A stretch of DNA of 64,000 bases from NCBI GenBank assembly GCA_977016875.1, contig CDRNST010000025.1, positions 2,604,001 to 2,668,000 on the forward strand, in the 5' to 3' direction. A program made the position numbers and the translations under genes. This DNA comes from Pavona decussata (Eukaryota). The stretch's first letter is position 1. Every line of letters begins with the position of its first letter. The notes beneath the pieces are model-generated. The model was given only the letters and a program-made list of their open reading frames with translations, ran no database searches and was not told the DNA's origin. Below, one piece after another: positions 1 through 57,298 of this stretch.

Positions 1-778
1 TAAATTATTTATCTTGGTGATACCGACGTCATACCACTTTTTTATTTTTTATTATTTTTTTTTTTTATAAAAAAACAGTTTTTTTTCCTACTAGAATTTT
101 CCTATTATTCCACAGTATTTCGTTTTTAGGATTAGTTTTGGAATCGATGCCCGTTGAGGGAAGCTTATCATCAAGGTTTAGTATATCTGTTGTAAAGTTG
201 CATTTTGTTAGAAAGACGAGACCACCATATTTGTGCAAGAGCTGGTTAGTTTGTATCGTTTCATATTTTGTGTAATGAAACAAAGAAGTGTTAGCTAAAT
301 TCAGTACTCTCTATTCACAACTTTCTTTTGAGACATTATGATCATGTCACAAACTCGGACTTCTTGCTTTATCAGGTGTTTCAAACACCTGGAAACAATA
401 AAAGCGCTTAGCCTGCGGCCTCATGCTTTCATCTGTTTCTCGGTTTCTGGAACCCCTGATTATGATAAAGCACCTGAAGTCGCTTTTGAAAGTACCTGAA
501 ATTCAGCTCGCGTCAGCCATTCATAATTTAGAAATTTTTCAGCGAGTAGTATAATATCTCTGAAACGGACCTAGATATAAATGAGATTGACGTATAAACT
601 CAACTTGCTGTGTAGCACATTACTAACAGGATGCACTGCGGGTGTGCATATTTCTCAGCGTATATTACTCATCAGTAAACATGCAAGAACGTTTCCTTGG
701 TGTTTTTAGATGTCAAAAAGGCCGCGAAAGAGCGTCTCAAAAGGACCTTCTTATTGATGTTGTTTTGATTTTTGACAG

Positions 779-1562
779 GAATCTAGACATTCCAAGTTGT
801 GGAAAGACATGGAAGAAACAGGCGTCCTTAGTATGCAACTTGTTGAACACGTATTTTCGAAGTATTCTCAGCAAGGCGTACCCAAGGAGGACATTTTGAA
901 TATGATGGAGCATTTCGGATTGATAGTCAAGTTTGCGAGGTCTCCAAGTGATATACTCTACTTTGTACCAGCGCAACTGAAGACGCCACCTAAAGCCCTT
1001 CGAAAAATGGAACCTTCGTTGTCCGACCCATGTCCACTGTATCTTCACTTTTTGGAGGGTTTTGTTCCTCATGGCCTCTTCTTTCAGCTGGGGTCAAGGT
1101 GTTCTCGACGGTGCCCCGCTAATAGATTCACGCAGCCTCCGAAATTTTATGAGGGAGCTGCGACGTTCTTTCTCGAAAAAAAGTTCAGGTACCAACTGAC
1201 TCTTTTGTGCAAGAAAAGGTTCATCAAGGTTGTCCTGAAAAACCAGACAAAGCAAGACGATCAACTCTCTCGGACTGAAAAAAAAGAGGTAGCAAGTTTG
1301 GTGCGATCGTTTCTAGAAGGTGAATTAGAAAATATGAAACAAGAGCTGCCGTGGTTGAACAATTTAAAGTATGAATTGTGTGTAGAGTGTCCTTGCTGTC
1401 CGGAGGAAGAAACCAAATGTGGAAACCACAGTCAAGTCTTTTGTGCACATGAAGACTGCATAAGCCTTGTCAAAGTTATGCCTAGAGGGAGTTTAAGCTG
1501 TTGCTCAATTTGTTGTCAAACACCGAGCCTCCCCAGACTGGAAAAGTGGTTCTCGGCAAAAG
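779..1562 (+). CDS. Copy A exon: C-terminal part of COR domain plus Cys/His-rich segment
   Basis: ORF 797-1585 with ILNMMEHFGLI, YFVPAQL and VPHGLFFQL motifs typical of COR. Acceptor ttgacag, donor aaag|gtgaag. The paralogous exon follows the Roc exons in copies B and C. Confidence 0.85.
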
Positions 1563-4500
1563 GTGAAGGCGATGTGTCCTATTAATGCTTAAAATAAGAT
1601 GAGCTCTAGGTCAGGTATTGAAATGATTAAATGACAGGTTACTGCCAATCAGTTGAAAGGTACCAGGAAAAGAGCTATCTTCCCAGTGCTCCTACTTGTT
1701 ATAATTAATAACAAGAACCGTTATCAACGAAACTGACAGGTTCATGCGTACGTCCGCTGTGAGTCGTATATTTGCGAGAACAAGCAATACATTTAATCTT
1801 GATTGTGATGAATTAGGTATCCCTAAGTCTTATGAAGTTCCCAAAGTGCACTACTCTTTGACATTGTCCGGCGCATGAATACTGATAATTAAGAAATCAG
1901 AGCTTAACGCAAGGTTGATGGCCATAGCAACCAATTTGACAGGGAGCAGGGTACAACGGTGAGGTTTCAGATTCAACAATGATTTCTTTCCCTCCTGGGC
2001 AAACCAGCAAAGGCTTGTTATCCTATTCTCATCATCTCACTTCGTCCTACCTCAATTTACCTTACCTTATCTCTTAACATCTAATCATATACCATCTTAC
2101 CTCAACTCATCTTATCTTATCTTTTATTGTCATCTTATTTCTTCTATCCTCACCACGCACACATCATCTCATCTCTTAACCATTCGTCACAACTCGCCTC
2201 TTTTCATCTCATGACAAGCCATGTCGTAAAACATGTTATGTCATGTCATGTTATCTCATTTCGCCCTTTCTGTAGCTGTCCATCCTGAGAATCGCCCTGG
2301 AGCTGAGGATTTATGCAACGCGAAAGCCCGAGGAACTGATAGACTGTCAGCTAGCTGCGGATCGGATCAGTTTGCTAGAGAGGAAGGGTGTTCACCGAGA
2401 ACAACTCAGGTAGAGTGAGATGGCCAACATTTTTGACAAAGAAACAAAACATACTTCGAGTTAAATGTATAAGCAATGAACGATACTACACAGACTTTCA
2501 CTTGACCTCCGAAATTATGTGCATTCACCTAAATTAGAAAAGTTTGTCATAAGACTAACGCTCTTAACTAGTATTCTGGAGAATTTAATTGTGGAACAAC
2601 TTATGTTTAGTTTGAACTGTTAAAAATTTAAGCTACATCATTATTTTCCCTTGTCAAACACGATGGTACGGAAAGAACCATTACGACTTTAATATGTAAA
2701 CTCTTAGAGTACAATTTTGAAGAGCTGAATATAAATATTTGAGAGTATGCGCAATTTTTCAAGTATAGAAATTTAAGCATTTCACACGCACAAATAGAAA
2801 ATGCCAGGTAGATCTTTACATAATTCTATAAGGTAGCATCATTTATGGCTTCTACTTTGCACCCCACAGCGTTTTCTCAATCGGAATGTGTATCTTTCAT
2901 GTCATGAACTCCTTCATCTTTATGTAAAACGTATCTCAATCGTGTTAAATTTAAATTGTGACGGAGATTAAGCTATGCAGTTTGTAAATGACAGTTAAAA
3001 TAGGAAATGTGGACAGATCACTTCTCAACCGTTTGACGACTGTTCATTTAAGAAACCAGATTCCAACTTTGTGATAAAAGTGTGTGAAAATCTAGATGAA
3101 GTTCTGTTCACTTATCATCGGCCGCCAAAAGGTTAGAGATTTTGTTTTCTTTTTGTTTTTTTAGATTAAACTATGTCTCATTCAAAATAATAGATCTTCA
3201 AAAGAAGTCAACCATGATTCTCTTTCAGGAGGTACATCCTGCTTCTGCTGGTAAATTACACAGTGAACCTGGGCAATCTTGTGCCTCTCTTAAAGTTTCT
3301 CTTTTGGCTAGTGAATGGAGGTCGTCCAAGGGTGGCGTGTCTACCATTAACAGAAAGCTTGCTATACACTTGGCAGAACAATCAACAGTAGAAGTCACTC
3401 TCCTAGTTCCTCAAAACGTCTGCAGTAAAGAAGACATGAAAAAGGCTGAAAGTTGCAAAGTTGATATCGTTGAAGTACAGTGTCGCACAGGCTTTAATCC
3501 CCTCGATTGTTTGATATCCCCACCAAAGGATCTTGCCATTGATGTTTTAGTGGGTCATGGGGTTACACTGGGTAAGCAAGCCCAATTCATTAAGGAATCT
3601 CATGGTTGTAAATGGGTGCAGGTAGTGCATACTGAACCTGAAGAACTTGGACCGTACAAGAAATACAGTGGAGCCATTGCCAGAGCTGAAGAGAAGAACA
3701 AAGATGAAGTAGACCTGTGCAAAAAGGCTGATCTTGTAGTTACAGTTGGGCCGAAGCTGCAGGCAGCCTTTTCATCCCAGCTGCGCTCGACTGAGAAGCA
3801 CCACTCTATTTTTCAGCTGACCCCAGGAACGTTCCGTGAATTTTCAGATATTAAACAAGTGGAGAATGAGATCAGCAGATTTAAGGTGTTGACCTTTGGC
3901 CGCAGTGATCCTGAAGACTTCGAGCTTAAGGGATACGATATTGCTGCCAAGGCAATAGCTCATTTGGCAGATAGCTCTTATCGTCTGATCTTTGTAGGTG
4001 CATCTGATGGCAAGCAAGACAAAGTCACTGCAAAACTACTGCAGTACGGAATTTCGAAAACTCAGCTGATCGTGAGGAGGTATGCACAGAGTGTAGAAGA
4101 ATTGAAAGAGGTCTTGCGTGAAGCCGATCTTGCGATCATGCCATCCAGAACAGAGGGTTTTGGTCTAACTGCTCTGGAAGCCCTGTCTGCTGGTCTTCCC
4201 ATTCTCGTGAGTTCCAACTCGGGTTTAGGAGAGACGTTGCTTAGTCTGCCACTTGGCAAGTCGTTTGTGGTAGCATCAGAGGATCCAAAGGAATGGGCGA
4301 ACAAAATTGCTGTTGCTCGTCGGAAGCAAAGGAAACAGCGGCTTAAAGAAATGCAAGCTCTGCGGACAAGCTATGAAGAGAAATTCAGCTGGGAGGAGCA
4401 GTGTAAAGTACTGTTGGATAGGATGCGGAAGATAGCTCATGGTGAGAATGATTTAAGACATAAGTACATTGAAATAAAGATCTCATGCTAAGGCGACAAT

Positions 4501-7500
4501 AGAGATAATAAATAATTAGACCGTTACAAAACGTCAAGTGCTTGTTTGATACAAATTGAAGCCACGAATGATAAGGTATTTGTATCAGACAGTCCCAGCA
4601 CCTCATAATGGAATCGGTATCAGTCAGTACTTGGCATTTTATAACGGTTATCTTGTTATCTGACTTGAGATCAGTATATTAATACATTTTATCTTAAAAA
4701 GTCACCTGTATATATGGGAATTATTTAAAGTTTCAATCGGTGAATGGGATTTCGAAATTTTGTAGAGATGTATTAAGAAGTGTAGGAACTTGTTCCCGCA
4801 CGAACATCGATGCCTTGTCTTCATTTCACAGCTTCTTTCTTTTTTTATAGCAAGGTCTACTATCCTTTCAGATTAATTAATAGTATCCTTCCCTTAATAG
4901 AAGATGCCTTATATACCACGAATCTCTAGGGATAAAGTTATCAGGCTGGACAACAAACCATTTACTCAAATAGGAAAAGATCCTCGCAGTTAGTACCCAA
5001 CTTAAGCAGTTGCGAAAAGAAAGCCTGAAAAAAAAAATAGTATATTACAGACTCATAATATGGACTCACAATATGACCACCTCCCAGTTGGCTTGATAGT
5101 TCAGTTGGTAGAGCACTGCACTGGCAGCGCAGAGGTCATGGGTTCGAATCCTGTTCAAGCCTAAACTTTTTTTCAGGCTTTCTTTTCGCAACTGCTTAAG
5201 TTGCGTACTAGCTGCGAGGATCTTTGTTCTATTTGATCTTTCATCCGCAGTTGAAAATATATGTTTCATATATTTACTTTCGTTGAACCATTTACTGACG
5301 TGCTCTCAGAACCCGTTCACTGTGAATCAAGCCAGCATATCTGTTGGATTCCCGGGGGAGGGGGTATAGTTATTTATTTATTTATTTGTTTATTTATTTG
5401 GTCGTTGTTCTCGACTAACGTGGAGATAGCGCTACCAATTCATCGCTGAAAGACCCTTTTCTGTTAGAAATCTAGATCTGGGTACTCAATGTTAAGAAGG
5501 CTTACTGATATCATACTTGCCATATTTGTTCTGAAAATCTTCGCGATATAGATATCCACCTTATAATTTGTATAGGTTTGATTTACACTGCATTGATAGT
5601 GACGGAGAGACTCTAGAGAAATCGTAAAAATATTGATTTTTGAATTGTTGCCCAGTAACGGCCTCTTTTGGTTTACCGCAGAAATCCCGCGTTAAAAAAA
5701 ATCGAGTCTCTCCTGGCGACCAACCGCTGGTCAAAAACCTTTAGCCTAATCATAAGTCCTATGAGTCTCGAACCTTCTCTGTCTGCTCTCGAACTTTGGA
5801 ACAGTTTGCCAGATAGCATTCGTTCATACGCTAATCTAAATACTTTTAAATCTTATTTTTTTAAAAAAGCCTCAAATTTTTGAGGATTTATGTTTGTTTA
5901 AATGTTAATTTAGTTAACTCTTGCGTTTTGTTAAGCGCCTAGAGCAGGATTGGATAGGTGCTATTTAAATTATTATACAGTGTAAAATGCGAGAATACTA
6001 ACCATGAACTACATAGGGCGCACAACGTAGACTATGTGGCCTTTAGATGAACTAAACTGCTCTGTTAAAACTATTTCATACTTAAAAATACTTAAATAAC
6101 TTTGTGACAAAATGATGACGGTGATGTAAAACAGCCACCATTTTGCTTCTTCGTACAAAAGCAGTTAGCACTTGTTTCCATGTCTGTTTTAAGAAGTAGT
6201 TGTTAGGGTATTCCTGCGCACCATCCTGTGGTGAAGTAATAAATAATGTACCTTTCCAACATCTGGGCACTTAGCACGGTCTACTCGTTCTAGTTATACC
6301 AGTCTGCAATTGGCGACTTATTACCAATTTTGCTAATTATGTGAATTCCTGGAAAATACCTGACCGTCTCTATCGAGGACAATGTCATGTTTACATGTCA
6401 ATTTGTTCGTGCTTTCGACAGCCGCAGCTACGGCCTTGCTAAATTTGAGTGAAGAAAATGCGGTCAGACAAAAGCGAAATTACATATGCACTCAAATCGT
6501 TATTTAGGACAAGCAATATAGTAATTTTGTGGATCAGGGCCAAGATTCAGAACTTATGAGATCGTACACACGCTCCCGACCCGTGAAACATGCCAGTCCG
6601 ATTAACTTCTAGAAAATTGATGAAACATTTAAGAAACCGTGAACGTTCTAGAGTTTATATTAATAGAATTCTTAAGGCATTTCCAAGGAGAAATTTGAAA
6701 CAAAAAGTGAAGAAAATTTTGATAAATTCCGTTCCTTCATCATCTAACTTTTCCCAAATGAACATGACAACCTCGTGTTTTTCTTGAATGAATTTTTATA
6801 CGACACTAAATGATATATCGAAATTTGGACAATATTTTTCGTCAGTCAGTTTTGAAATATTCTCATGGATTCACTATTAAAATGGATTTCTTGGTAATTC
6901 ATTGGAAACGAACAGACGTCCATAATACGCCCACTTTTTTTGTCAGTGTAATTTTTTGTACACCTCTAAGCCATTGCACTGTCACGTTGTGGTATTGCAA
7001 GAACAATCACTAATATTTCATTGATAACAATAGTTTTGTAGAAGTATTGGGTGACTAATCTCTCACAGCTACAATTTTTAATACTGATGTCACACACTCC
7101 ACAGACCTAAAGTATCAACACAAGTTGCCAAAAAATATTGATTTATCATGCTGCTAAGGGGTCGACAGACTAAATACGCATGTTTCAGTTTTAATTAAGA
7201 GAAAACGTTATTTATTGTTTAATACAGGTACTTCAGATGATGATTTGAATGAAGATAGCAGGGCTCCTACTAAATCCAAGGAGGGTTTGTCACACAAAGG
7301 GAAAAGGCACACAGAAGATACAGGTAAGAGCGTCTGAATCTTTGTTGCTTTTGTGAGATGATACTCATTATTAAAACTGTTTACGTGGTTTGATGGTGCA
7401 ATATCACGCACTTAAAACAGAAAATGTTACTTAAGAATATCTTACTTTCACGTGCACTTAATTGTTAGAAGTTCGTTATTAGAAGACTAATTTTCCGGAC

Positions 7501-10500
7501 TACATCTCTAACAAAGAATTATGGACTTTGCTTGCGGAAAAGTAGGTACCTCAAAAGAACTGCTGATTGGTAAGATTACAGGACAAAGGTTTGAGAACTC
7601 CCGTAATGTACCATCACACGTGTACATCCCCAATGTCCATCTAGAATAAATTAAAATGAGAGCTTTTGTTTGAGAACCTTATGCTGGCTTGTACTGTAAA
7701 AAACCATTACATAAGATAAACAGCTAAATATCAAGCAGTGAAAGCGAAAAACAAGTAAAATATCGAGCGATGAAACATACACTACATTTGATGATGCGAC
7801 CGAGAATGTTCACTTCCTGCGTCCAGATCCAAGTTGATCAAATATTCATTACGAAACTACAAAGCTATTTTTACTACCTTATTAAATATTCTATTTCAAT
7901 GCAAAGCTATTGAAGCGCGCTTGTAAAGACTGGTTCTTAAATATAATTTCCAAAGTGAAAAGCGAAAGCTCTCGGAACAAAAACTGTCGTCTGAAAAATG
8001 CACTTTTTTATCGGCGACATTTCCATCCGTCTATCCAAATGATCCCATAATCCATCACTCGTTCCAGTCTTCCCGTAGTTTCAGGAGTGGGAAATTATTA
8101 GTTCTTTTCTGTTAAAAGAAGATGTTGACTTCCTAGTTCTATTTCATATATTTTAAGAAAATAGGACTATTGGTGATATATTCAATTTTCAAGAATTTGT
8201 GTCTTTTTGGAAATATTCTCATAGGTTTAATTTTAAAATGTGTTTTTTGGCGCTTTAGTTGAAGGGTACACTTTGAAACTGCCATATTTTGGGCGCCTTT
8301 AAGGCATTTTGCTGTCACGTTATTGCGTTATTACAAGAATAATAAGTCGTATTTCATTGACAGGATTAGCTTTTTGAAAATAGTGGGTGATGTCACAAAT
8401 TAGCAAAAGTATTACTTTATACAGCCTTGTTGACGTTACAGTAAGCACGCCCTTCCTTACTTTCTTTTCTTAAAATGCCACATGCAATAACGAATTGTGC
8501 AAAGTTTCTGAAAAAATTTCATTACAGCTTCTTTTTTGGCTGGAATTACCTTAGTATCACCTATAATCGATTTACTCTATTGATAAAGGGATTGACAGAT
8601 TTAAACGCGTGTTTAACGCTCAAACATTCGTTTAACGGGCTTATTTTTTTTTGTAGTTTAGTTCAATGAAAAATCAAAAGTTCAATAACCACACAATCAG
8701 TTCAAAAAAGACACTTCATTTCAGTGACAGTAGACCTGAATTGTAAGAATAACTATAGGTTTTTTTATTATTATTATTTCATTTGGACAGGTAGGAGGAG
8801 AGGGGAGAGGGTTTTACGGGGTCAATGAAAAATCAAAAGTTTAATAGCCACACTACCAGTTCAAAAACCACACGTCAGTTCACTGACAGTCGACCTCAAT
8901 TGTAAGAATAACTATAGGAGAAGTGTTTTTTATTCCATTTGGACAGGAAGGAAGAGAGGATAGAGGATTTTACGGGGGCAAGGTCCATATTTAGAGCAGG
9001 CAGAAAGTACGAATAAAAAAAATAGTACCTATACATTCACAAATAATGGTAACGGGCTTACACTGACGTATTTAAAAATCTATTGTCCATTTATCCATTG
9101 TTTTTCATTGTAATCATATTTAGCATCAGCTGTCAAATAATGTAGCTTTCTCTTGTACTTAGCTCCTCTTTATGTTCTTTCGTCTTGCTTGTGCGTCAGA
9201 TCAATGGACCGAGAAAAACAAGTCTTCCTCTGTAGCATGACAGCCATAGGTATTAGAACATGAAGAAACTTCTTCGTGCTGTTTTAATACAGATTTTATT
9301 GTTTATAACATGTTTATGCCCATGGATAGCAAGAAGAACTGGGCAAACGGAGCTGAGGAACAACTGAAACAACCAGAACCGCAAACAAACGAACAAGCGG
9401 GTGAGCGAAGGGACAGCCGAATGACCGAGTTAATGATCAAACTTTCCACGGGGCGTTCACCGACGAAATCAAACGAACGAAAAACCGAGTCAGGAACGAA
9501 CTCGCGAAACTAGATGAACGACCGAGTGGACAACCCTTTTGTTTGCAGTCATAAGCGCTTTTAACGTTGCATTAAAATATTAGAAAATCGATCCTTATAA
9601 GCGCTTATGACTGCAAACAAAAGATAATACTTTATTGAACACTCCCCAGAGGGGCTTTTCGGTGATCAATACATCATGTTTAAAATGATGTGTTATAACC
9701 ACGTGAAGCTTCAGAACATTTAGAAGGACTAATACGGTTTTTTCTTACTCTTCAGCGAAGCAAAGTTTACGTGATGTCGAGCAACTGCAATGTTATCCTA
9801 GAAACGCCACCAGGATGACTGACGTATCAAGGAGGTTGGACGAGATTGCTTCAGACAAAGGCTTCACAGTTTCTGACAATGAGGGATTAGGAAATTGCAT
9901 GTTCTACGCATTGTCAGAACAACTTAGCCTTGTGAAAGGAATTCAAATCTCTCATAACGTTTTGAGGCAGCACACAGTCCAGTATCTCGAAAGGAACCCT
10001 ACACTAGTAAGTAGCTGAGAGTGAAGGAGCTTGGAACACGACGACTTTCTAACCCTCACTTTCAGGAAACTGACTGTCAATTCATGTCCAAAATGTAACA
10101 TAAATGAAATATAGATTATAAAACAAAGTCATCGAAAGTAGGATTCCAGCTCAATTCATCGTTTATTTTGCAGGAATAATGAATTGGACAGCATATTTTA
10201 TTCCAAACACTAGACATTAATAGAGCCTCTGAGAGTACTTACTGTTCATTAAATTGGTGCACTGAGGTCTGACGAAGGGTTATTGGAGCTAAACTGAAAT
10301 TTTGTCAGAATATATATTCAGAGCATCTCACCTTCATTCTTACAGAAATTAGTGAGATTGAACTTCTGATCATCTTCGGAAGGAAGTTTTCACGATCAAC
10401 CTTAAGAAATGGTCAAAAAGTAGAAACAAATTCCTTGCTAAACATTGCCTTCCTCCTTATGAGCTAACATGCGCTCCAGCCGAATATCATGCCAGCCTCA

Positions 10501-13500
10501 TTCCCATGGTCTCTCCTCTTTCCGTCCAGGAGAGACCCTGGGAACGAGGTTGAAATCATGCTTATTCTTATTATTTTCATCTGTTCAGTCAGATGGGACG
10601 AAATTGTTCAATTTTGTTCACGGGTGTCAGTCTTGGTCTGATTATCTAACAAAGATGTCAGCAGATGGGACGTGGGGTGATCACGTGATTCTCCATGCTG
10701 TAGCAAACTGCTATGAAATATGCATTCATGTGATTAGCAGTCTGTCACCCAGTCATGACGTAATCATCAGCCCAGAACAAAGTCGTGATGTTGAAAGCAG
10801 CAACTGGCTTGTGCTGGGGCACTTACACGAGCACCACTATGTCAGTCTTCAACCCAAACGAGGTGAATAAGCTGTCACAGTTTAACTTTGAAAAATAGGT
10901 ATTGGCAGATAAAAGCTAGTCGGTTTGACCTACGAGAAGATAACCAGAGCCAAACTGAACGATAAATTGAGTAAAGTTAATGCGAGCCAATTCATATCTA
11001 GTTTTTGTTACTTGTATCATCCGCATAGAATTTCGATTAGTTTACACTGTAAAATATTTCGAGGGTTCTTTTAATTTTAGGCATTTCTACAAAAATTTAT
11101 GGATGCCAACTTTTAAAATGGTTATACAAGCAGTCAACTCCTGCTAAAACAGAGGCTTTCAGGACCACGATTTAGTGCGGTGCGTAATATTACCAATTCA
11201 TCCTCGCAGGGTCTTCATTCCTATCCACAATAACAGGATGTCTGTAATGCAAAGGTGTTCGTAAGAGAGAACTTAACTGTATTTTATTACAGTTGAATGG
11301 TTTGATACGTGGTTAAAAGGGGTGTGAGTGATAGTTTGCTAAAAAAATTCGACGCGCTCTAAATAAGCTTTTTCTTTTACAGTTTGTTATTTTCATGTTT
11401 AATCTAAATGTCTAAATAAGTAAACTAAGGCTATCACTTAATATGCTACGTAGAACGTAGTATTAATTGGCAAAGACGACACCTTCTGGGGGTACTGAAA
11501 ATTAACCAAGGTCTCTGTCTTGCTTATGTAGGATGAACAGTATGTCGAACAGTATGAAATTCGCAGTTTGAGTGTTGTAGCGAAGGTTGTGAGAAGAGTA
11601 TGGAAGTATGAATGACGTCATTGAGAGTTGTTACCTGCGCACGTGATCAGAGTCTTGAGTTCACTCGGAGTGACTGGTCAATAAAGTTTAGCAAACTGTT
11701 TTGGCGAGTAGCGGACAAACACAGGGAAACTTTTGCAGCAAAGCAAAATTTGTCCGATGAAAAAATTCCTTCGCCGACCGTTGCAAGTGACCTCAACCAG
11801 GTTAAAAAAGCTAGATCTTTGTTGTGATGTGAAAAGGAAGAAACTATTAGTCCAAACGTGTTGTCCATAGAAATCCTGTAATGGTAAGTAATCGACTACA
11901 ACTAGCAGTGAAGCGACAGACATCCTTTCACATTTTGAGATCAGAAAATTCCATCGTCTTGTTATTCGTGAACGGCTCGTAGCGTAGCGTACTCTCTTCT
12001 CTTCTTTCTTTCTCGCAGGATAGCATGGAAGGACGAAGATGTTAAGGAATTTTTCATACAACTCTTTTTCTGTGAACGCTGTCTCCATTATCTCAAACCA
12101 CTGACCACTTCGTGTCAGTGTCGAAAACCGTAGTTCAACAGAAGTACAAGCGAGAACTGATGCAATAAATAACAACCTGTACCTCCGCCTTTTCTATTCT
12201 TCTGTAAAGCAGACGAGAGAAAGGTCGATTTCAGAACTTCCTGCTGAAACACAAGCGCTCTTCTTATGAGAAGAAATTCTGAGAACTTTTCGTCCGCGAT
12301 GTTTTTACAGAGGAAGCAGCATGCGCACTAGGCAAGAATCGAGTACGGATCAGTACGCTGGCCGAGATGTTGAGCCGTTTACACGTACCAAATCATAATT
12401 GCGCATCGTTTGGCACGGTAGAAAAAAGGATGCGTAAATTAATAATCAGTAATATGTTTTTGGTACGCGTACCACATTCACCCGAGCCGTGCCAAACATT
12501 TTCTGTCGTGTAAATGGGACTTTAACTCCTACCGTGCAATCTATCAGAGGGAAGCTTCTAAGCAGTGCTTTGCGGTGCTAGGTTTCTTATCCTTTGCAAG
12601 GCGCATAGGCATAGCGGTTTGGTATTTGGCTGAAATCCTGTTCATACTCAAATGAAAGATATAGGGTGGTACTTCAGTGGATGTTTTTTGTTTGTTTGTT
12701 TGTTTGTTTGTTTTTTTATGTAATGGCTCCAATGAAAAGTCTTGCATGAAGTACCAAGATTGGGACCATATTAGAACTATAAAACTGCTGAGCGCTACTT
12801 TCCCTTTCAACTGAGAGGTTCTAAAATTAAAGATTAGTAAAACCTTCCTTAAAAGGGGCATCTAGAAGTTCATGCATATCAGAACGATGGAATGGTAATA
12901 TTTGAATCAAACACTTACAGGTAGTTCTGGAGATGAAGATATGCCAACGCCAACATCCAAAAGAGGGTCATCATGTCCCAGTCCTGGTCAGTGCTCCAAG
13001 CGAATCAGACTTCTGGGCAACACAGGTAATAAGTTCAGAAGCTTTATGCAGATGTAGAACGTCACTGTCAGACGAAATTGAATGTTTGGGTTTTAAATTG
13101 CATTTTATTGACATGACCACCACATATACAACTATCACATTCTAAATTTTGTATATCAAGTTTTTGAAAGTTTGTATTAGTTGTATATATGTTACCAAAT
13201 CTATTGATGATTTTCAACGTCCACTCCGCCATTAATGCCTTTCTGTCTTCCAACAAATCTCCAAATATACAGATTTCTCTGCAAATCAACGATACGAAAA
13301 GGAATAAAAATAGACTGACGAGCCTTTTGCCTTCGTAGGTTTAGCGAAAGAAGGATGTCCGTCTGATGATGAACTAGAACGTCTATCAATGAATGTAGAG
13401 GAATGGAGGCCGCTTGGGCGTCGACTGGATTTTAACAATGCACAGCTGACTGGGTTTGATAAAGACACTGAATTATGGCGTGAGAAAGCCTTTGCCATGC

Positions 13501-13622
13501 TAATGGCGTGGAAGCGTAGAGAAGGCAAATCTGCCACATACAGAGTCTTATTTGAAGCATTGCGTCATGAATTTGTAAATCGTAAAGATTTAGCGGAGAA
13601 AATTTGCTGCCACTCAGACTGA
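779..13622 (+). CDS. Copy A, 5'-partial multi-exon gene: (Roc outside window)-COR-Cys-rich-GT4 glycosyltransferase-OTU-Death
   Basis: Exons 779-1562, 2276-2409, 3229-4441, 7228-7323, 9756-10006, 10589-10862, 12921-13025 and 13339-13622 all have AG/GT boundaries and compatible phases. They total 3141 nt (1046 aa + stop) with no internal stop. Confidence 0.85.
2276..2409 (+). CDS. Copy A linker exon preceding the glycosyltransferase (phase 1-0)
   Basis: ctgtag|ctgtcc ... actcag|gtagag. Conserved as a 134-nt exon in copy B (24098-24231). Confidence 0.75.
3229..4441 (+). CDS. Copy A exon: GT-B fold glycosyltransferase, CAZy GT4 / Glycos_transf_1-like
   Basis: ORF 3142-4491 has N-terminal EWRSSKGGVS, VVHT, FGR..LKG and the EX7E motif PSRTEGFGLTALEALSAG. 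Splice sites tttcag|gag and catg|gtgaga. Confidence 0.9.
4976..5281 (+). mobile_element. tRNA-derived repeat (tRNA-like core 5090-5162) bracketed by approximately 60-bp inverted repeats
   Basis: Acceptor stem GGCTTGA/TCAAGCC, A box TAGTTCAGTTGG, B box GGTTCGAATCC. Arms 4976-5038 and 5166-5226 are reverse complements. Absent from copy B. Confidence 0.7.
7228..7323 (+). CDS. Copy A 96-nt linker exon (GTSDDDLNEDSRAPTKSKEGLSHKGKRHTEDT), phase 1-1
   Basis: atacag|gtactt ... acag|gtaaga. Same length and open in B (27833-27928) and C (51317-51412). Confidence 0.75.
8661..8977. repeat. Intronic tandem duplication, 2 x about 160 bp
   Basis: tcaatgaaaaatcaaaagtt ... ttttacgggg occurs at 8663 and 8822. 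Confidence 0.8.
9756..10862 (+). CDS. Copy A OTU-like cysteine protease domain, two exons (9756-10006 and 10589-10862)
   Basis: Cys box DNEGLGNCMFYALSEQL, central YLTKMSADGTWGDHVILHAVA, His box LGHLHEHHYVSL. The two exons are joined by a phase-0 intron. Confidence 0.88.
10493..10552. mobile_element. About 60-bp hairpin MITE (also at about 30064-30123; absent in copy C)
   Basis: cagcctcattcccatggtctctcc ... ggagagaccctgggaacgaggttg inverted ends, with an atcatgc-like direct repeat on the flanks. Confidence 0.65.
12921..13025 (+). CDS. Copy A 105-nt linker exon (GSSGDEDMPTPTSKRGSS...), phase 1-1
   Basis: ttacag|gtagtt ... acag|gtaata. Copy B (31455-31553) carries an in-frame 6-nt deletion. 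Confidence 0.72.
13339..13622 (+). CDS. Copy A terminal exon: Death domain
   Basis: WRPLGRRLDF, EKAFAMLMAWKRREG, ATYRVLFEAL and NRKDLAEKI match the death-fold consensus. Acceptor cttcgtag, stop TGA. Confidence 0.88.
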
Positions 13623-15806: not shown

Positions 15807-17694
15807 GCGTGACACAGAACAGAACATGACTGCACAATAATTTCCTTCAAATGCAAATTACAGAAAAATGTTTTCATGAATCATCAGACTCAGTGGATGC
15901 TAAAGAAGCCAAACAAGGGGAAGATATATTCGGAGACGTGGACGGGCTCTCAAACGATAGTTCAGATAATATTACAGTATTAAATTGCAGAAAATTCATA
16001 GTCCAAATCACAGGATTTTCTTCTCTGTTTTTGAGTGGGGAGAAGCTTTTATTTGGTAGGGCTTTCTGGGGGCTGAGGGTTTTAATGTTGGAAGATATTT
16101 ACGTCCCACGTTTGAGCTAACTGAAAAACATTTTGGTCGTCAAAAACTACAAGCATAAAACTTAGTTGTTTGGTCGTCTTATAATATAACTGAGAAGTAT
16201 AAACTGAGTTTTCTACCAACAGAAGCTACGAACACCCGCATAGTGTGTTTTTGTGAAGAGATTATTGATACTCTTTAAATGAGCATTGGCCAAAAGCAAA
16301 GCTTCGTGCGCTTGCACACTTGTTTTGAGAACACCAAACATGGTTGCCAATAGTTTTTAATTGATGATGAGTACCACCATCCCGTCAATTGAGACTGGAG
16401 CCCATAATAAAGAGCCTCTATCTGTATTAACTCCTTGGGTCAAACCTTTCCCGAGTAAATTTATTTTATTGAAATGCTTTTTCCGCAAAAAGGTTTGGAG
16501 TATAACTTTTGATCTATAATTATTTAATTATTATTGCTATTCTTTGACTGGGTATTCAAAATGTGGGCTTCACCTGAGAGCCGTTCTGAGAATAAATATA
16601 GCCGGGAAAGGGTTGATTTCACTGAGATTTAAAGTAACCTACATAACTACACTCTGAATTGTAGTTTCTACTTAAACAATAGAGCGTTTTTGTCGAGGCA
16701 CCATCGGCTGACAGTTGCCCGTGGAAATTTGACATTAGCCTGAGATGATAAACTTCGAGGACTTATACTTGAATATTGTACTATTTTAAAAACATCATAT
16801 TGATAAGGACAACTATCAAACCGACAGACACGAGACAGAAATACTCTATTTTTATTGTTCAGCACTAAGATAATTTTTTCGGCATGATTTAAAATTCACT
16901 GAGACCGGTATTTCCCATCCTACTGCTTTCCAATTTAACCTCAGTTTAATTTAAGGTGAAAAGTTGAAACAAGAAAAGACGAATATCATAAGTAATATAC
17001 TAAGTAATGAATTGGATGAATAAATGGAAGGTTTTTTCGGGGACGAGTACAATCCATCCAGGCATTTTCACCTGATGGACACTTTGCCCTGATAGCACAG
17101 CGCTGATAGTGTCTCTCAGCGGATGGGTTGTATCACATCACGTGATCAATTTAATGCGATCGGGCTTGGAGAACATTTTGCAGTGAACTATACTGGGTGT
17201 TACTGTCGATCGATCTGTGTAATGACAATCACAATCAGCAAAATTTCCCATGTCTCCGATGTGTATTAGATACTGCGATGTTCGTCTGCGAAGGAAAGCT
17301 TTCAAGGAAAGTAAGCGCTCGTTACCACCAACACTTCTTGTCAGGTGAAAAACCCGTTATATACAACTAACAATTTCTACTAACAAAATTATCAGATTAT
17401 CTTTTGACGTTTTTAAATGGGAGAGGATAAGTCTCTCTGCTCAGAAAGTGTGTTCCCTCTGTCAGACGTCCAGTCAATAGACACAGTAGAGTGTTCAAGA
17501 AACGTGACATGCACGAAAGAGACTAACTTGTACGTCAGGGAGAAATTCTAAATTTTACTCAGGTTGAAATGAGAGGATGAAACTCTCCAATCACACATTT
17601 CAAACTGTGGTTAAATAGTTACAACTATTTTTAAAGCATCTACTAAACCATGTGTGTATTATGTATTTTTTTTATAACATATTTCTTCCATAAG

Positions 17695-18080
17695 TACCAA
17701 GTGAGATTAAAGCACGAGGACCAAGAGCGCAGCTTGCCTATGTAAATGCGTTAAAGACTGGAAAAGTAAACGTGTACCGTGCTAGAATCATGCTGATAGG
17801 CCAAGATCGAGCGGGAAAGACGAGTTTGAAGAAATCATTCTTAGGTCTGCCATTCGACCCTAATGAGCAGAGCACTGATGGAATAGAGGTTGACCCATCA
17901 AAGTTCGAAATTGACGTTGATCAAGTGAAGAACTGGCAGCGAACTGACGAGAAGTTAAGTGTGTCTCAGTTTGCAAACGACCTTGCAAAGATGGTGGCTG
18001 CTCAGATTGGAGAAGATGAAACAAGTGTAAACCCAGGAGTTCAAAATGAATCAAAGGAGATGACATATCAAAAGAATGAA
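17695..18080 (+). pseudogene. Copy B Roc GTPase exon 1 (P-loop)
   Basis: IMLIGQDRAGKTSL (G1) and QSTDGIEV (G2). 386 nt, as in copy C. Confidence 0.85.
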
Positions 18081-23390: not shown

Positions 23391-25021
23391 GTGATAGCGA
23401 TGTGTCCTATTAATGTTTAAAATACGATGAGCTCTAGATCAGGTATTGTAATGATTAGATGACAGGCTACCATCAATCAGTTGAAAGGTACCTGGAAAAC
23501 AGCTATCTTCCCAGTGCTCCTACTTGTTATAATTAATAACAAGAACCATTGTAAACGAAGCTGACAGGTTCATGCTTACGTCCCCTGTGAGTTGTATATT
23601 TGCAAGAACGAGAGATACAGTCAGTGTTGGTCCTGTTAATTAGGTGTGCCTTAGTCTTATGAAGATCACAAAGTGCACTACTCTTTGACATCGTCCGGCG
23701 CATAAACACTGATCATTAAGAAATCAAGGTTGATGGCTATAGTAACCAATTTGACAGGGAGCAGGGTACAACGGTGAGGTTTCAGATCCAACAAGGATTT
23801 CTTTCTCTCTTGGGCAAAGCAGCAAAGGCTTATTATCCCATTCTCATCATCTCACTTCGTCCTACCTCATTTTATCTTACCTCATCTTATCTCTTAACAT
23901 CTAATCATATGCCATATCTCACCTCAACTCATCTTATCTTATCTTTTATTGTTATCTTATTCCTTCTATCCTCGCCACGCACACATCAGCTAATCTCTTA
24001 ACCATTCGTCACACCTCGCCTCTTTTCATCTCATGACAAGCCATATAACATGTTATGTCATGTCATGTCATCTTATCTCATTTCGCCCTTTCTGCAGCTA
24101 TCCATCCTGAGAATCGCCTTGAAGCGGAGAATGTATGCAACGCGAAAGCCCCAGGAATTGATAGACTGTCAGCTAGCTGCGGATCGGACCAGGTTGCTAG
24201 AGACGAAGGGCGTTCACCGAGAACAACTCAGGTAGAGTGAGATGGTCAACATTTTTAATAAAGAAAAAAAATATATACTTCGGGTTAAATGTATAAGCCA
24301 TGAACGATACTACACAGACTTACATTTGACCTCCGACATTATGTGCATTCACATCAATTAGAAAGGTTTGCCATGAGACTAATTGTGGAACAACTTATTT
24401 TTAGTTTGAACCGTTGACGATTCAAGCCACATCATTATTTTCACCTGTCAAACACGATTCTACGGAAAGAACCATTATATTACGACTTTAACATGTAAAT
24501 TGTTAAGTACAATTTTGAATAGCTGAATATAAAGATTTGAGAGTATGTGCAGTTTTTCAAGTACAGAAAATTAAGTATTTCACAGGTACAAAGAGAAAAT
24601 GCCAGATAGATCTTTACATAATTCTATAAGGTCGCATCATTTATGGTTTCTACTTTGCACCCGACAGCGTTTTTCTCAATCGGAATGTCTATTTTTAATC
24701 TCATGAACTCCTTCATCGTGTTAAATTGAAAGTGTGACGGAGATTAAGCTATGCAGTTTGTAAATGACAGTTGAAATAGGAAATGTGGACAGACCACTTG
24801 TCAACCGTTTGACGACTGTTCATTTAAGAAACCAGATTCCAACTTTGTGATAAAAGTGTGTGAAAATTTAGATGAAGTACTGTTCACTTATCACCGGCTG
24901 CCAAAAGGCTAGAGATTTCTTGTTTTGCTTTTGTTTGTTTGTTTGTTTTTTTTTTCGATTAAACTTTGTCTCATTCAAAACGATACATCTTTAAAAGGAG
25001 TGAACTATGATTCTCTTTCAG

Positions 25022-26232
25022 GAGGTACATCCTGCTTCAGCTGGTAAATCACACAGTGAACCTGGGCAATCTTGTGCCTCTCTGAAAGTTTCTCTTTTGG
25101 CTAGCGAATGGAGGTCGTCCAAGGGTGGCGTGTCCACCATTAACAGAAAGCTTGCTGTACACTTGGCAGAACAATCAACGGCAGAAATCACGCTCTTAGT
25201 TCCTCAAAACGTCTGTAGTGAAGACGACAAGAAAAATGCTGAAAGTTGCAAAGTTAATATCGTTGAAGTACAGCTTCATACAGGCTTCAATCCCCTAGAT
25301 TGTTTGATATCCCCACCAAAGGATCTAGCCATTGATGTTTTAGTGGGTCATGGGGTTACACTGGGTAAACAATCCCAATTTATTAAGGGATCCCATGGTT
25401 GTAAATGGGTGCAGGTAGTGCATACTGAACCTGAAGAACTTGGACCGCACAAGAAATACAGTGGAGCCATCGCCAGAGCTGAAGAAAAGAACAAAGATGA
25501 AGTAGACCTGTGCAAAAAGGCTGATCTTGTAGTTACAGTTGGGCCAAAGCTGCAGGCAGCCTTTTCGTCCCAGCTGCGATCGACTGAGAAGCACTACTCT
25601 ATTTTTCATCTGCCCAGGAACGTTCCGTCAATTTTCAGCTATTAAACAAGTCGAGAATGAAATCAGCAGATTTAAGGTGTTGACCTTTGGCCGCAGTGAT
25701 CCCGAAGACTTCGAGCTTAAGGGATACGATATTGCTGCCAAGGCAATAGCTCATTTGGCAGATTGCTCTTATCGTCTGATCTTTGTAGTTGCATCTGATG
25801 GCAAGCAAGACGAAGTCGCTGCAAAACTACTCCAGTACGGAATTTCTAAAACTCAGCTGATCGTGAGGAGGTATGCACTGAGTGTAGAAGAATTAAAAGA
25901 GGTTTTACGTGAAGCCGATCTTGCCATCATGCCATTCAGAACAGAGGGCTTTGGCCTTACTGCTCTGGAAGCCCTGTCTGCTGACCTTCCCATTGTCGTG
26001 AGTTCCAACTCGGGTTTAGGAGAGACACTGCTTAGTCTGCCACTTGGCAAGTCGTTTGTGGTAGCATCCGAGGATCCAAAGGAATGGGCGAACAAAATTG
26101 CTGTTGCTCGTCGGAAACAAAGAAAACAGCGGCTCAAAGAAATGCAAGCACTGCGGACAAGCTATGAAGAGAAGTTCGGCTGAGAGGAGCAGTGTAAAGC
26201 ACTAGTCGATAGGATGCGGAAGATAGCTCATG
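25022..26232 (+). pseudogene. Copy B GT4 exon, frameshifted with a premature stop
   Basis: Split into ORFs 25007-25645 and 25539-26183. The exon is 1211 nt versus 1213 nt in A, and TGG>TGA occurs at 26181. Confidence 0.88.
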
Positions 26233-28967: not shown

Positions 28968-30433
28968 CGAAGCAAAGTTTACGTGATGTCGAGCAACTGC
29001 AATGTTATCCTAGAAACGCCACCAGGATGACTGACGTATCAAGGAGGTTGGACGAGATTGCTTCAGACAAAGGCTACATAGTTTCTGACAATGAGGGATT
29101 AGGAAATTGCATGTTCTACGCATTGTCAGAACAAATTTTCCTTGTGAAAGGAATTCAAATCTCTCATAACGTTTTGAGGCAGCACGCAGTCCAGTATCTC
29201 GAAAGGAACCCTACACTAGTAAGTAGCTGAGAGTGAAGGAGCTTAAAGAGGCACTGTTATGGCGATTTTGCTGTATTTTTGTCAAAACTGCTCAAATATT
29301 TGACAAAGAACCTGTTTTATAACATGACATTGCTCTTACAACACCGGGAAGAAAATATCAAGGCTTTTCTCCTAGAAAGAACAAAACACAATTAATTTTA
29401 AGCGACTTTCCTAAAATACAGTGGAAGAACTTGAAAAAATTGGCCAATTTTTCTCAAGTTGCAATCCACTTCCATCCTAGCCATCCGCAGGCAAACATAA
29501 CTGAAGGTGGCTTCTGTGCTCTAGTTGCTTTATCGTTATCAAAACTGAACCATTATTCTAACGATTCCATTGAAGAAAAATACGTTTTTTGGCTATTCAT
29601 AGCCACTGCCCCTTTTAAAAATGTGGACTTTCTGACTGTATCCCCACTTTCAGGAAACTGACTGTCAATTCATGACCAAAAGGCAACATAAATGAAATAT
29701 AGATTATAAAACAGTCATCGAAAGTAGGATTCCAGCTCAATTCATCGTTTATTTTGCAGGAATAATGAATTGGACAGCATATTTTATTCCAAACACTAGA
29801 CATTAATAGAGACTCTGAGAGTAGTTACTGTTCATTAAATTGGTGCACTGGTGTCTGACGAAGGGTTATTGGAGCTAAACTAAAATATTGTCAGATATTT
29901 AGGGCATCTCACCTTCATTCTTACAGAAATGAGTGAGATTGACCTTCTGATCATCTTCGAAAGGACGTTTTCACGATCAAACTTAAGAAATGGGCAAAAA
30001 ATAGAAACAAATTCCTTGCTAGATATTGCCTTTCTCCTTACGAGCTCCAACCGAATATGATGCCAACCTCATTCCCATGGTATCTCCTCTTCCTGTCCTG
30101 GAGAGACCCTGGGAACGAGGTTGAAATGATGCTTATTCTTATTATTTTCTTGTCTTCATTCAGATGGGACACAACTGTTCAATTTTGTTCACGGGTATCA
30201 GTCTTGGTCTGATTACCTAACAAAGATGTCTGCAGATGGCACGTGGGGTGATCACATAGTTCTTCATGCTGTAGCAAACTGCTATGAAACATGCATTCAT
30301 GTGATTAGCAGTCTGTCACCCAATCATGACGTTACCATCAGCCCAGAACAAAAACGTGATGTTGAAAGCAGTAACCGGCTTGTGCTGGGGCACTTACACG
30401 AGCACCACTATGTCAGTCTTCGACCCAAACCAG
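28968..30433 (+). pseudogene. Copy B OTU exons (28968-29218 and 30160-30433)
   Basis: GNCMFYALSEQ and HHYVSL are retained. The second-exon acceptor reads cttcat|tca instead of ttcag|tca. Confidence 0.82.
29247..29614. mobile_element. Non-autonomous DNA element flanked by TTAA, copy B specific
   Basis: ttaa|agaggcactg ... cactgcccctt|ttaa; not present in the A intron at about 10030. Confidence 0.65.
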
Positions 30434-48341: not shown

Positions 48342-48372
<31 letters not shown>

Positions 48373-54300: not shown

Positions 54301-54573
54301 GATGTTGACAGCAGCAACCGGCTTGTGCTGGGGCACTTACACGAGCACCACTATGTCAGTCTTCTACCCAAACCAGGTGAATAAGCTGTCACAGTTAAAC
54401 TTTGAAAAATAGGTATTGGCAGATACAAGCTAGTCGGTTTGACCTACGAGCAGATAATCAGGGCCAAACTGAACGATAAAATGGGTAAAGTTAATGCGAG
54501 CCAAAAGCATATCTGGTTATTGCTACTTGTATCATTTGCATAGAATTTCGATTAGTTGACACTGTATAATATC

Positions 54574-54654
<81 letters not shown>

Positions 54655-57216: not shown

Positions 57217-57298
<82 letters not shown>

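What the first reader, a model, noticed from the sequence alone, without database searches (positions are those of the whole stretch)
1850..6900. Glycosyltransferase is an optional phase 1-1 cassette: present in A and B, absent in C
Seen: the linker exon plus GT4 exon enter in phase 1 and exit in phase 1 (1347 nt in total). In C the COR exon (ends 50165) is followed within 1.15 kb by the 96-nt linker exon. Intron homology to A stops near 50400 and resumes near 50960, so about 5 kb including GT4 is missing. The OTU pair (525 nt) and the linker exons are also 1-1, and the Death exon is entered in phase 1. Inference: effectors are exchangeable by exon shuffling or skippable by splicing without frameshift.
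Basis: partly seen in the sequence, partly recalled or inferred. Interest (0 to 1): 0.8.

Follow-up and report, generated by a model that had tools for sequence, protein, structure and literature searches.

The report
Optional glycosyltransferase exon cassette in ROCO genes
In a tandem array of coral-type TPR-Roc-COR "switch" genes, a two-exon glycosyltransferase cassette that keeps the reading frame is intact and transcribed in one copy, decayed in a second and missing from a whole sub-lineage of copies. This is a clear but not unexpected example of effector domains being added, lost and swapped at phase-1 introns.

Summary

**Copy A.** The COR-B exon ends at 1562 in phase 1. A 134-nt linker exon (L1, 2276-2409) and a 1213-nt GT4 exon (3229-4441) together make 1347 nt and run from phase 1 to phase 1. 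A 96-nt linker (L2, 7228-7323) follows. RNA-like contigs cover only these exons. They show the L1-GT4, GT4-L2 and direct COR-L2 junctions at exactly these sites.

**Copy C.** C goes from COR (ends 50165) to L2 (51317) across a 1151-nt intron with no L1 or GT4. The same short intron is conserved in three other paralogs, so it is inherited and not a gap artefact. The N gap lies downstream of L2.

**Copy B (the correction).** B's GT4 exon is dead: it has a 2-bp deletion and a TGA. B also has two mutated splice sites and a truncated TPR exon, so B is a pseudogene.

**Module swapping.** A ≥1.7-kb tract carrying linker L3 and the Death exon in A and B is 84-87% identical to genes whose COR is only 52% identical. 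Its boundary lies in a phase-1 intron.

**Not shown.**
- Alternative splicing within one gene is not demonstrated.
- Whether GT4 was lost or gained is unresolved; I favour loss.

The scan had already noted GT4 exon cassettes and ROCO-GT4 genes elsewhere in this genome.

The parts
779..1562 (+). Copy A, COR-B exon (last exon of the Roc-COR core). Donor G|GTGAAG, leaves in phase 1.
   Evidence: Sequence. RNA-like contig depth at 1400-1599 and joints starting at 1562. No Pfam hit of its own. Called COR-B from its position after the COR-A exon.
2276..2409 (+). Copy A, linker/adapter exon L1, 134 nt. Enters in phase 1 and leaves in phase 0. First half of the cassette.
   Evidence: Splice sites. Open frame. 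RNA depth only on the exon, and a contig joining it to the GT4 exon (X6 record 17). Present in all four intact GT4-bearing paralogs.
3229..4441 (+). Copy A, GT4 glycosyltransferase exon, 1213 nt. Phase 0 in, phase 1 out. Intact, with an E-x7-E motif.
   Evidence: PF20706 GT4-conflict, E 5.9e-89. Motif. GT-B relatives in the PDB. RNA depth and the 4441|7228 joint.
4866..6186 (+). Repeat-rich insertion in A's GT4-L2 intron, absent from B.
   Evidence: A/B alignment breaks here. Very high depth at 4800-5400 and 5600-5800 in the DNA run X15.
7228..7323 (+). Copy A, linker exon L2, 96 nt, phase 1-1.
   Evidence: Sequence. RNA joints from 4441 and from 1562 land here.
9756..10006 (+). Copy A, OTU exon 1, 251 nt, phase 1 to 0. 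Carries the catalytic Cys motif.
10589..10862 (+). Copy A, OTU exon 2, 274 nt, phase 0 to 1.
12011..12524 (.). High-copy ~510-bp repeat in the OTU2-L3 intron. Marks the left edge of the swapped L3+Death tract.
   Evidence: Many 88-89% copies on other contigs. Homology to genes 4 and 6 begins exactly at 12524.
12921..13025 (+). Copy A, linker exon L3, 105 nt, phase 1-1. No counterpart found in C.
13339..13622 (+). Copy A, Death-domain exon (type D1), entered in phase 1. Ends with TGA.
   Evidence: PF00531, E 3e-11..
15844..15965 (+). Remnant of copy B's TPR exon. The rest of the array is missing and the donor reads AT instead of GT.
24098..24231 (+). Copy B, L1 exon (open frame).
25022..26232 (+). 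Copy B, GT4 pseudo-exon. 2-bp deletion at 25612/25613 and TGA at 26181-26183.
30160..30433 (+). Copy B, OTU exon 2, whose acceptor reads AT instead of AG.
49382..50165 (+). Copy C, COR-B exon, leaves in phase 1.
50166..51316 (+). Copy C, 1151-nt intron that replaces A's 5665-nt COR-L2 interval. No L1 or GT4.
   Evidence: Conserved over its full length (79-83%) in three other paralogs.
51317..51412 (+). Copy C, linker exon L2, 96 nt, phase 1-1.
51604..51717 (+). Copy C, candidate second linker exon L2b, 114 nt. Open, phase 1-1, with good splice sites. A tandem duplicate of L2, specific to the GT4-less lineage.
   Evidence: No RNA evidence.
52449..52654 (.). Assembly gap (206 N), downstream of L2 and L2b and upstream of OTU exon 1.
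53337..53587 (+). Copy C, OTU exon 1.
54103..54376 (+). Copy C, OTU exon 2.
58700..58977 (+). Copy C, Death exon (type D2), entered in phase 1. Ends with TAA.
   Evidence: PF00531, E 1.4e-13..

Best explanation
The window holds three members of a 12-gene tandem array on one contig. The genes encode TPR - Roc - COR-A - COR-B followed by a string of C-terminal effector modules.

Each module comes with its own short, charged linker exon, and each is bounded by phase-1 introns: [L1+GT4 glycosyltransferase], [L2+OTU deubiquitinase-like protease], [L3+Death].

- The [L1+GT4] unit is 1347 nt and phase 1-1, so its presence or absence leaves the frame intact.
- Copy A has it intact, and transcripts splice it in.
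- Copy B is a pseudogene in which it has decayed.
- Copy C belongs to a sub-lineage of four paralogs that inherited a short COR-L2 intron without it. C still has an open COR-L2-OTU-Death frame.

The difference is therefore a fixed structural difference between paralog lineages, arising from one event. I think it was most likely a deletion of the cassette in the C-type ancestor (about 60:40 over an insertion in the A-type ancestor). It was generated by recombination or indel inside introns and tolerated because of the phase symmetry.

The same array shows a true module swap by intronic recombination at the Death slot.

The functional reading is inferred, not shown. The TPR array senses, Roc-COR switches, and the C-terminal modules act: GT4 by glycosylating a target, OTU by cleaving ubiquitin-like modifiers, Death by recruiting cell-death adaptors. 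On this reading paralogs differ in output.
For: - Domains: GT4-conflict E 5.9e-89 and OTU. Roc, COR-A, Death and TPR.
- Exon coordinates and phases come from the sequence.
- The A chain from COR-B to Death is open. Skipping L1+GT4 stays open. Skipping GT4 alone hits a stop. The C chain is open to its stop.
- RNA-like contigs in three runs from three studies cover COR, L1, GT4 and L2 but not the unique intron sequence. They give the joints 4441|7228, L1|GT4 and 1562|7228. The DNA run covers everything and has none of these joints.
- B lesions.
- The C-type short intron is conserved at 79-83% in three other paralogs.
- GT4 presence tracks the COR clade. COR identity to A is 88-92% in the GT4-bearing copies and 82-84% in those without it.
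- For loss: no GT4 outside the A-type is more than 64% identical. The A-type GT4s sit on a long stem (0.62) with a shallow crown. A possible L1-like mini-exon lies upstream of GT4 in the related C49 ROCO-GT4 family.
- Module swap: the L3+Death tract of A, B and gene 7 is 84-87% (nt) and 92-97% (aa) identical to genes whose COR is 52% identical. The GT4-bearing genes 1 and 2 carry the other Death type.
- 29 of 30 GT4 exons share the phase-1 donor.
Against: - The polarity is not settled. ROCO relatives that share OTU-Death (contig C144, and the gene at C25:2678997) have no GT4 among the scored hits. Simple parsimony could therefore favour a gain in the A-type lineage.
- Only 103 of 211 GT4 candidates were scored.
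- Gene conversion is active: a 99% identical stretch links C and gene 8. Identity-based dating is therefore weak.
- Paralog sequences outside the window could not be fetched. Their architectures rest on match coordinates only.
- The RNA runs are contigs from other individuals, mostly 90-99% alike. They cannot be assigned to single paralogs.
- B's lesions were not checked against reads.
- No function of any domain has been tested.
Confidence: 0.78

Rival explanations
1. The cassette is a true alternatively spliced (skippable) unit. Single A-type genes make both GT4-containing and GT4-less proteins by skipping L1+GT4.
For: Phase 1-1 symmetry makes skipping frame-neutral. One RNA-like contig (run X1, depth 51) joins 1562 directly to 7228, and the DNA run lacks this joint.
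Against: Four paralogs have this junction natively. Contigs were laid at 80% likeness or more, where C-type COR and L2 sequences can also map. The joint was seen in one of three RNA runs and in one contig. The informative variant positions do not separate the paralogs.
Confidence: 0.15
2. The cassette was gained. A segment carrying L1+GT4 was inserted into the COR-L2 intron of a TPR-Roc-COR-OTU-Death ancestor, giving the A-type. The C-type keeps the ancestral state.
For: The other ROCO genes that share OTU-Death (C144 family, C25:2678997) show no GT4 among scored hits. GT4 exons are plainly mobile between gene families and keep one conserved phase-1 donor. The middle of the C-type intron and A's roughly 5 kb are mutually unalignable, so the breakpoints do not point either way.
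Against: No candidate donor exists; the nearest GT4 outside the A-type is 64% identical and lies across a 0.62 stem. Within the A-type, GT4 evolves more slowly than COR (94-96% against 88-92%). A gain after the 84% A/C split should therefore have left a donor about 90% identical. A-to-C49 divergence is similar for COR and GT4, as expected for co-descent.
Confidence: 0.35
3. The absence in C is an assembly artefact: GT4 is hidden in the N gap or collapsed.
For: There is a 206-N gap in C's effector region.
Against: The gap lies after L2 and L2b, between L2 and OTU1, where A and B have no GT4. The COR-L2 intron of C is gap-free. It is conserved end to end in three other paralogs. The L2-to-gap region is also conserved in them. 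A spliced COR-L2 junction is transcribed.
Confidence: 0.02

Closest known systems
Bacterial AP-GTPase (Roc-COR) conflict proteins with variable C-terminal effectors, GT4 among them (Kaur, Iyer, Burroughs, Aravind, eLife 2021, PMC8195603)
   Same: A repeat sensor at the N-terminus, a Roc-COR switch, and a variable effector position after COR that can hold a GT4 domain of the same Pfam family (PF20706). Paralogs within one genome differ in effector.
   Different: Here the protein is an intron-rich animal gene. The sensor is TPR rather than LRR. Three effectors are strung together (GT4, OTU, Death). The variation is realised through exon cassettes at phase-1 introns rather than gene-level fusions.
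Coral GT4 / Glycos_transf_1 lineage-specific expansion and NLR effector shuffling (Hamada et al. 2013 as summarised in PMC4083563; PMC8195603; PMC12314368)
   Same: Hundreds of GT4 domains fused to NTPase and repeat modules in tandem clusters. Shuffling of effector domains has already been inferred, and GT4+TPR genes have been reported as clustered.
   Different: In the passages I searched by keyword in these three papers, none gave the exon and phase anatomy, the L1 adapter exon, a ROCO-GT4-OTU-Death layout, or paralog-level presence/absence with mapped breakpoints. I did not read the papers in full.
Class 1-1 module exon shuffling in metazoan multidomain proteins (Patthy; from my own knowledge, not re-read here)
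   Same: Modules bounded by phase-1 introns on both sides are inserted, deleted and duplicated without a frameshift. Recombination occurs in introns.
   Different: The classical cases are extracellular modules. Here the modules are cytoplasmic enzymes and a Death domain in an immune-type switch protein. One module needs a 134-nt adapter exon to convert phase 1 to the phase-0 acceptor of the GT4 exon.
DAPK1 (ankyrin repeats - Roc - COR - Death domain)
   Same: A repeat - Roc - COR - Death order in an animal cell-death regulator.
   Different: There is no kinase here. The repeats are TPR rather than ankyrin, and GT4 and OTU lie between COR and Death.

Membership tests
GT4-conflict glycosyltransferase (Pfam PF20706; GT-B fold, retaining GT4) | Full-length match to the family profile above the gathering score | tested here: met
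   A exon 3229-4441: 299 bits against a cut-off of 26, profile positions 2-384 of 385.
GT4-conflict glycosyltransferase (Pfam PF20706; GT-B fold, retaining GT4) | E-x7-E motif of the C-terminal Rossmann half | tested here: met
   An E-x7-E match at residue 309 of the exon translation. Weak but consistent PDB relatives: GlgA, MshA-like, WaaG.
GT4-conflict glycosyltransferase (Pfam PF20706; GT-B fold, retaining GT4) | Glycosyl-transfer activity | not testable with these tools
   Needs an enzyme assay.
ROCO proteins (Roc GTPase + COR) | Roc domain with P-loop | tested here: met
   PF08477: 29.9 bits (cut-off 27) for 17694-18104 and 32.3 bits for 45259-46071.
ROCO proteins (Roc GTPase + COR) | COR domain directly after Roc | tested here: inconclusive
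   COR-A scores 28.7 bits, below the cut-off of 35.3. The exon called COR-B has no Pfam hit. It does match COR-adjacent exons of about 90 other loci in this genome.
OTU cysteine protease | Profile match plus catalytic Cys and His motifs | tested here: met
   PF02338 scores 21.7 and 25.8 bits on the two exons (cut-off 23.3). The translation shows the usual Cys-containing and His-containing motifs. Activity was not tested.
Death domain | Profile match above the gathering score | tested here: met
   PF00531: 43.7 bits (A) and 51.2 bits (C), against a cut-off of 22.6.
Exon-shuffling module of class 1-1 | Unit bounded by introns of the same phase (phase 1) | tested here: met
   L1+GT4 is 1347 nt, phase 1 to 1. 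L2, the OTU pair and L3 are also 1-1. Splice sites are confirmed by RNA-like contigs for COR, L1, GT4 and L2.
Exon-shuffling module of class 1-1 | The same module occurs in different protein contexts | tested here: met
   At least 103 intact GT4 exons. Some lie next to ROCO-type exons and some next to OTU exons of another family. Some appear to start with their own ATG.
Exon-shuffling module of class 1-1 | Recombination breakpoints lie in the flanking introns | tested here: inconclusive
   Met for the L3+Death cassette. For GT4, the indel lies within the COR-L2 intron, but neither the direction nor the exact breakpoints could be fixed.
Alternatively spliced cassette exon | Inclusion and skipping junctions from the same gene | tested here: inconclusive
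   Both junction types are seen. The skipping type cannot be separated from the native junction of the GT4-less paralogs.

The most novel reading that the evidence does not exclude
The array acts as a combinatorial effector library. Ongoing recombination in phase-1 introns, perhaps together with regulated skipping of the L1+GT4 unit, mixes GT4, OTU, linker and Death cassettes behind a hypervariable TPR-Roc-COR sensor. Individual corals would then carry and express different sensor-output pairings, an innate-immune diversification mechanism working at the exon level.
Probability: 0.2. Interest if true: 0.7.

Novelty: new member of a known kind. Interest (0 to 1): 0.42.

Why it matters
It gives a concrete exon-level account of how the large GT4- and Death-containing receptor-like families of corals acquire different outputs. 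It has splice sites supported by RNA, an inherited presence/absence state, a pseudogene intermediate and a mapped module swap, all within about 350 kb.

It also offers natural near-isogenic pairs (A-type against C-type) for testing what a GT4 effector adds to a Roc-COR-OTU-Death protein. No conflict-type GT4 domain has a known substrate.

The general principles are already in the literature: 1-1 exon shuffling, effector shuffling in coral NLR-like genes, and Roc-COR-GT4 fusions in bacteria.

Tried and rejected
- **Fetching paralogs.** I reconstructed their architectures from match coordinates instead.
- **GT4 remnants in C.** I looked for L1 or GT4 remnants in C's intron with sensitive blastn and tblastx and found none.
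- **Assigning the COR-L2 contig.** The listed read variants are sites where A alone differs from B and C, so they could not assign the contig to a paralog.
- **L2-like segment in C.** I first read the segment at 51604-51717 as a dead copy. On checking it is open and phase 1-1.
- **COR-B exon.** Pfam gave nothing for it.
- **Literature.** I found no paper describing intron phases of coral ROCO or GT4 genes.
- **Not run.** The large protein searches, structure prediction and complex prediction were not needed for this question.
- **Spliced models.** Joined spliced models were translated only in local scripts to check frames.
- **Other.** The N gap was left as it is.


Full report
**What the window is.** The window is C25:2604001-2668000 of a 602-Mb eukaryotic genome. 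A self-comparison shows three tandem copies of one gene unit.
- Copy A's 3' part lies at about 249-15,000.
- Copy B runs from about 15,800 to 36,000.
- Copy C runs from about 39,000 to 59,000.

Pfam scans of single exons give the following:
- a 489-aa TPR array (39016-40482);
- Roc on two exons;
- COR-A;
- an exon without a Pfam hit that I call COR-B from its position;
- GT4-conflict glycosyltransferase (PF20706, E 5.9e-89);
- OTU on two exons;
- a terminal Death domain.

The layout is TPR - Roc - COR - [GT4] - OTU - Death. I did not identify the organism myself. The literature on a massive GT4 expansion in corals (PMC8195603; PMC12314368) and an earlier scan note both fit a stony coral.

**Checking the observation in copy A.**

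| Exon | Coordinates | Length | Phase in / out | Note |
|---|---|---|---|---|
| COR-B | 779-1562 | | out 1 | donor G\|GTGAAG |
| L1 | 2276-2409 | 134 nt | 1 / 0 | open frame |
| GT4 | 3229-4441 | 1213 nt | 0 / 1 | acceptor ...TTTCAG, donor G\|GTGAGA |
| L2 | 7228-7323 | 96 nt | 1 / 1 | |
| OTU 1 | 9756-10006 | 251 nt | 1 / 0 | pair totals 525 nt, phase 1-1 |
| OTU 2 | 10589-10862 | 274 nt | 0 / 1 | |
| L3 | 12921-13025 | 105 nt | 1 / 1 | |
| Death | 13339-13622 | | in 1 | carries the stop |

- A local frame check shows the chain from COR-B to the Death stop is open. It stays open if L1+GT4 are both removed. It runs into a stop if GT4 alone is removed. L1 therefore works as a phase adapter between the phase-1 COR donor and the phase-0 GT4 acceptor.
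- All five introns between modules are phase 1. The two introns inside modules are phase 0. At a background of roughly one third, five out of five has a chance of about 0.004. This is my estimate, and it assumes independence.

**RNA evidence.** I laid contigs of four public runs on 1400-7399.
- Three runs from three studies behave as RNA. Depth sits on COR (1400-1599), L1, the GT4 exon and L2, and is zero or near zero in unique intron sequence.
- The fourth run covers everything and behaves as DNA.
- Joints with GT..AG ends confirm 4441|7228 (GT4 to L2), with four contigs in two runs and a variant form in a third.
- One contig joins L1 to the GT4 exon.
- One contig (depth 51) joins 1562 directly to 7228.
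- None of these joints is in the DNA run.
- The COR-L1 junction was not among the rows printed.

The predicted splice sites and phases are thus real for the family. These are contigs from other individuals and mostly 90-99% alike, so they cannot be assigned to single paralogs.

**Copy C.**
- COR-B ends at 50165 and L2 is 51317-51412. The intron is 1151 nt, against 5665 nt in A, and contains no L1 or GT4 at DNA or protein level.
- Collinear similarity to A is 78% just after the donor and fades by about 50420-50465. It returns weakly near 50960, in a repeat that also flanks L2 in A, and clearly at 51264.
- The chain COR-L2-OTU1-OTU2-Death (58700-58977) is open to its stop.
- The N gap (52449-52654) lies after L2, where A and B have only intron.
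- The GT4-less intron is conserved over its whole length at 79-83% in three further paralogs: C25:2411331, C25:2467214, and C25:2565302 (which has a 4.1-kb insertion). The absence is inherited and not an assembly slip.
- The same four genes share a second, L2-like 114-nt exon candidate (51604-51717). It is open, phase 1-1 and has good splice sites, and A-type genes lack it.

**Copy B: the correction.** B has L1 and a GT4 exon at the expected places, but the exon is broken by two lesions.
- A 2-bp deletion sits at 25612/25613 relative to A.
- A TGG-to-TGA change sits at 26181-26183.

B carries further damage.
- The acceptor of its OTU exon 2 reads AT instead of AG.
- Only the last ~120 nt of its TPR exon remain, and the donor there reads AT instead of GT.

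B is a pseudogene, unless these are assembly errors, which I could not check against reads. 'Present in A and B' therefore overstates the case. Within this window only A has a working cassette.

**The wider array.** I combined searches with COR-B, GT4, OTU exon 2 and the Death exon. Twelve ROCO genes lie at C25:2.33-2.69 Mb.
- Five have COR 88-92% identical to A, and all of them carry GT4: genes 1, 2, 7, A, and B in broken form.
- Four have COR 82-84% identical to A and lack GT4: genes 3, 5, 8 and C.
- GT4 presence follows the COR clade, which means one event.
- Death type does not follow it. A, B and gene 7 carry type D1. Genes 1 and 2 (which have GT4) and all the C-type genes carry type D2, which is 55-59% identical to A's.
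- D1 is 92-96% identical at the protein level to the Death exon of genes 4 and 6, whose COR is only 52% identical to A's and which have neither GT4 nor OTU.
- At DNA level the shared tract runs from window 12524 through L3, Death and the 3' flank to about 14250, at 84-87% identity. Everything upstream (10863-11986) is shared with the D2 genes instead.
- The switch point lies in the phase-1 OTU2-L3 intron, at the edge of a high-copy ~510-bp repeat.

This is a genuine exchange of a [linker+effector] cassette by intronic recombination. It also suggests that the swapped Death domain is the one in A and B rather than the one in C.

**GT4 exons genome-wide.** At least 103 intact single-exon copies were scored, out of 211 candidates.
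- In 29 of the 30 best, from 12 contigs, the exon ends at the homologous codon with G|GT(A/G), which is phase 1.
- Most start at a phase-0 CAG acceptor. Some seem to start with their own ATG.
- GT4 followed by OTU also recurs in a large family on contigs C64 and C162.

**Loss or gain.**

For loss in the C-type:
- The nearest GT4 outside the A-type is 64% identical.
- In a tree, the A-type GT4s form a shallow crown on a 0.62 stem. They are sister (92/81 support) to the GT4s of other ROCO-type genes on C49, C106 and C289.
- Within the A-type, GT4 changes more slowly than COR. A gain after the A/C split should therefore have left a donor about 90% identical, and none is seen.
- A weak L1-like mini-exon precedes GT4 in the C49 family.

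For gain in the A-type:
- The ROCO relatives that share OTU-Death (C144, C25:2678997) show no GT4 among the scored hits.
- Gene conversion blurs identity-based timing.

I put loss at about 60%.

**Mechanism.**
- Shown: the frame-neutral cassette structure, its transcription and splicing, the inherited GT4-less state, the pseudogene, and the Death-cassette swap.
- Inferred: TPR acts as sensor, Roc-COR as switch, and GT4, OTU and Death as outputs. This is by analogy with bacterial Roc-COR conflict proteins that carry GT4 in the same position (PMC8195603) and with DAPK1.
- Not shown: skipping within one gene, or any enzymatic activity.

**Novelty.** All of the following are published:
- effector shuffling in coral NLR-like genes (PMC4083563);
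- the coral GT4 expansion and its variable architectures (PMC8195603);
- clustered GT4+TPR genes (PMC12314368);
- Roc-COR-GT4 fusions in bacteria.

Phase 1-1 exon shuffling is textbook knowledge. What is added here is the exon and phase anatomy, the adapter exon, and a documented presence/absence plus swap in one ROCO array. I rate it a new member of a known kind and of moderate interest.

Joined spliced models were used only for local frame checks and were not sent to search tools.

Noticed in passing
window 15844-36000 (copy B): Copy B carries at least five disabling changes. The TPR exon is truncated and its donor reads AT. The GT4 exon has a 2-bp deletion and a TGA. The OTU exon 2 acceptor reads AT. 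B is probably a pseudogene inside an otherwise active array.
   Followed up: yes
window 12524-14250, and C25:2437190-2438998 and C25:2490311-2491634: The L3+Death tract of A and B is 84-87% identical to two ROCO genes whose COR is only 52% identical. The boundary sits at a high-copy ~510-bp repeat (12011-12524). The Death-domain swap is therefore probably in the A/B lineage, not in C.
   Followed up: partly
window 51604-51717: A second L2-like linker exon candidate (114 nt, open, phase 1-1, good splice sites). It is conserved in all four GT4-less paralogs and absent from A and B. No RNA evidence.
   Followed up: partly
window 54556-56949: Two long ORFs (470 and 327 aa) lie in the intron after C's OTU exon 2. 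The first has a weak reverse-transcriptase match (PF00078, E 4e-4), and both are flanked by low-complexity runs. Probably a retroelement insertion specific to C.
   Followed up: no
window 39034-40485: A TPR array with a 120-nt period whose units are 82-85% identical to each other. It lies upstream of C's Roc exons. The equivalent array is missing from B.
   Followed up: no
C25:2561159-2565302 (outside the window): One GT4-less paralog has a 4.1-kb insertion of unknown content 46 nt into the short COR-L2 intron. Its COR exon end is 99% identical to C's, which suggests recent gene conversion. Its L2 region is duplicated.
   Followed up: no
contigs C64 and C162 (coordinates): More than ten loci have a GT4 exon 2-10 kb upstream of an OTU exon 2 on the same strand. 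That OTU exon is 75-80% identical to A's, while their GT4 is only 52-53% identical. The OTU module may have moved between families more recently than GT4.
   Followed up: no
window 43721-44130 and 44154-44560: A 410-bp tandem duplication (93% identical) in an intron of copy C's Roc region.
   Followed up: no
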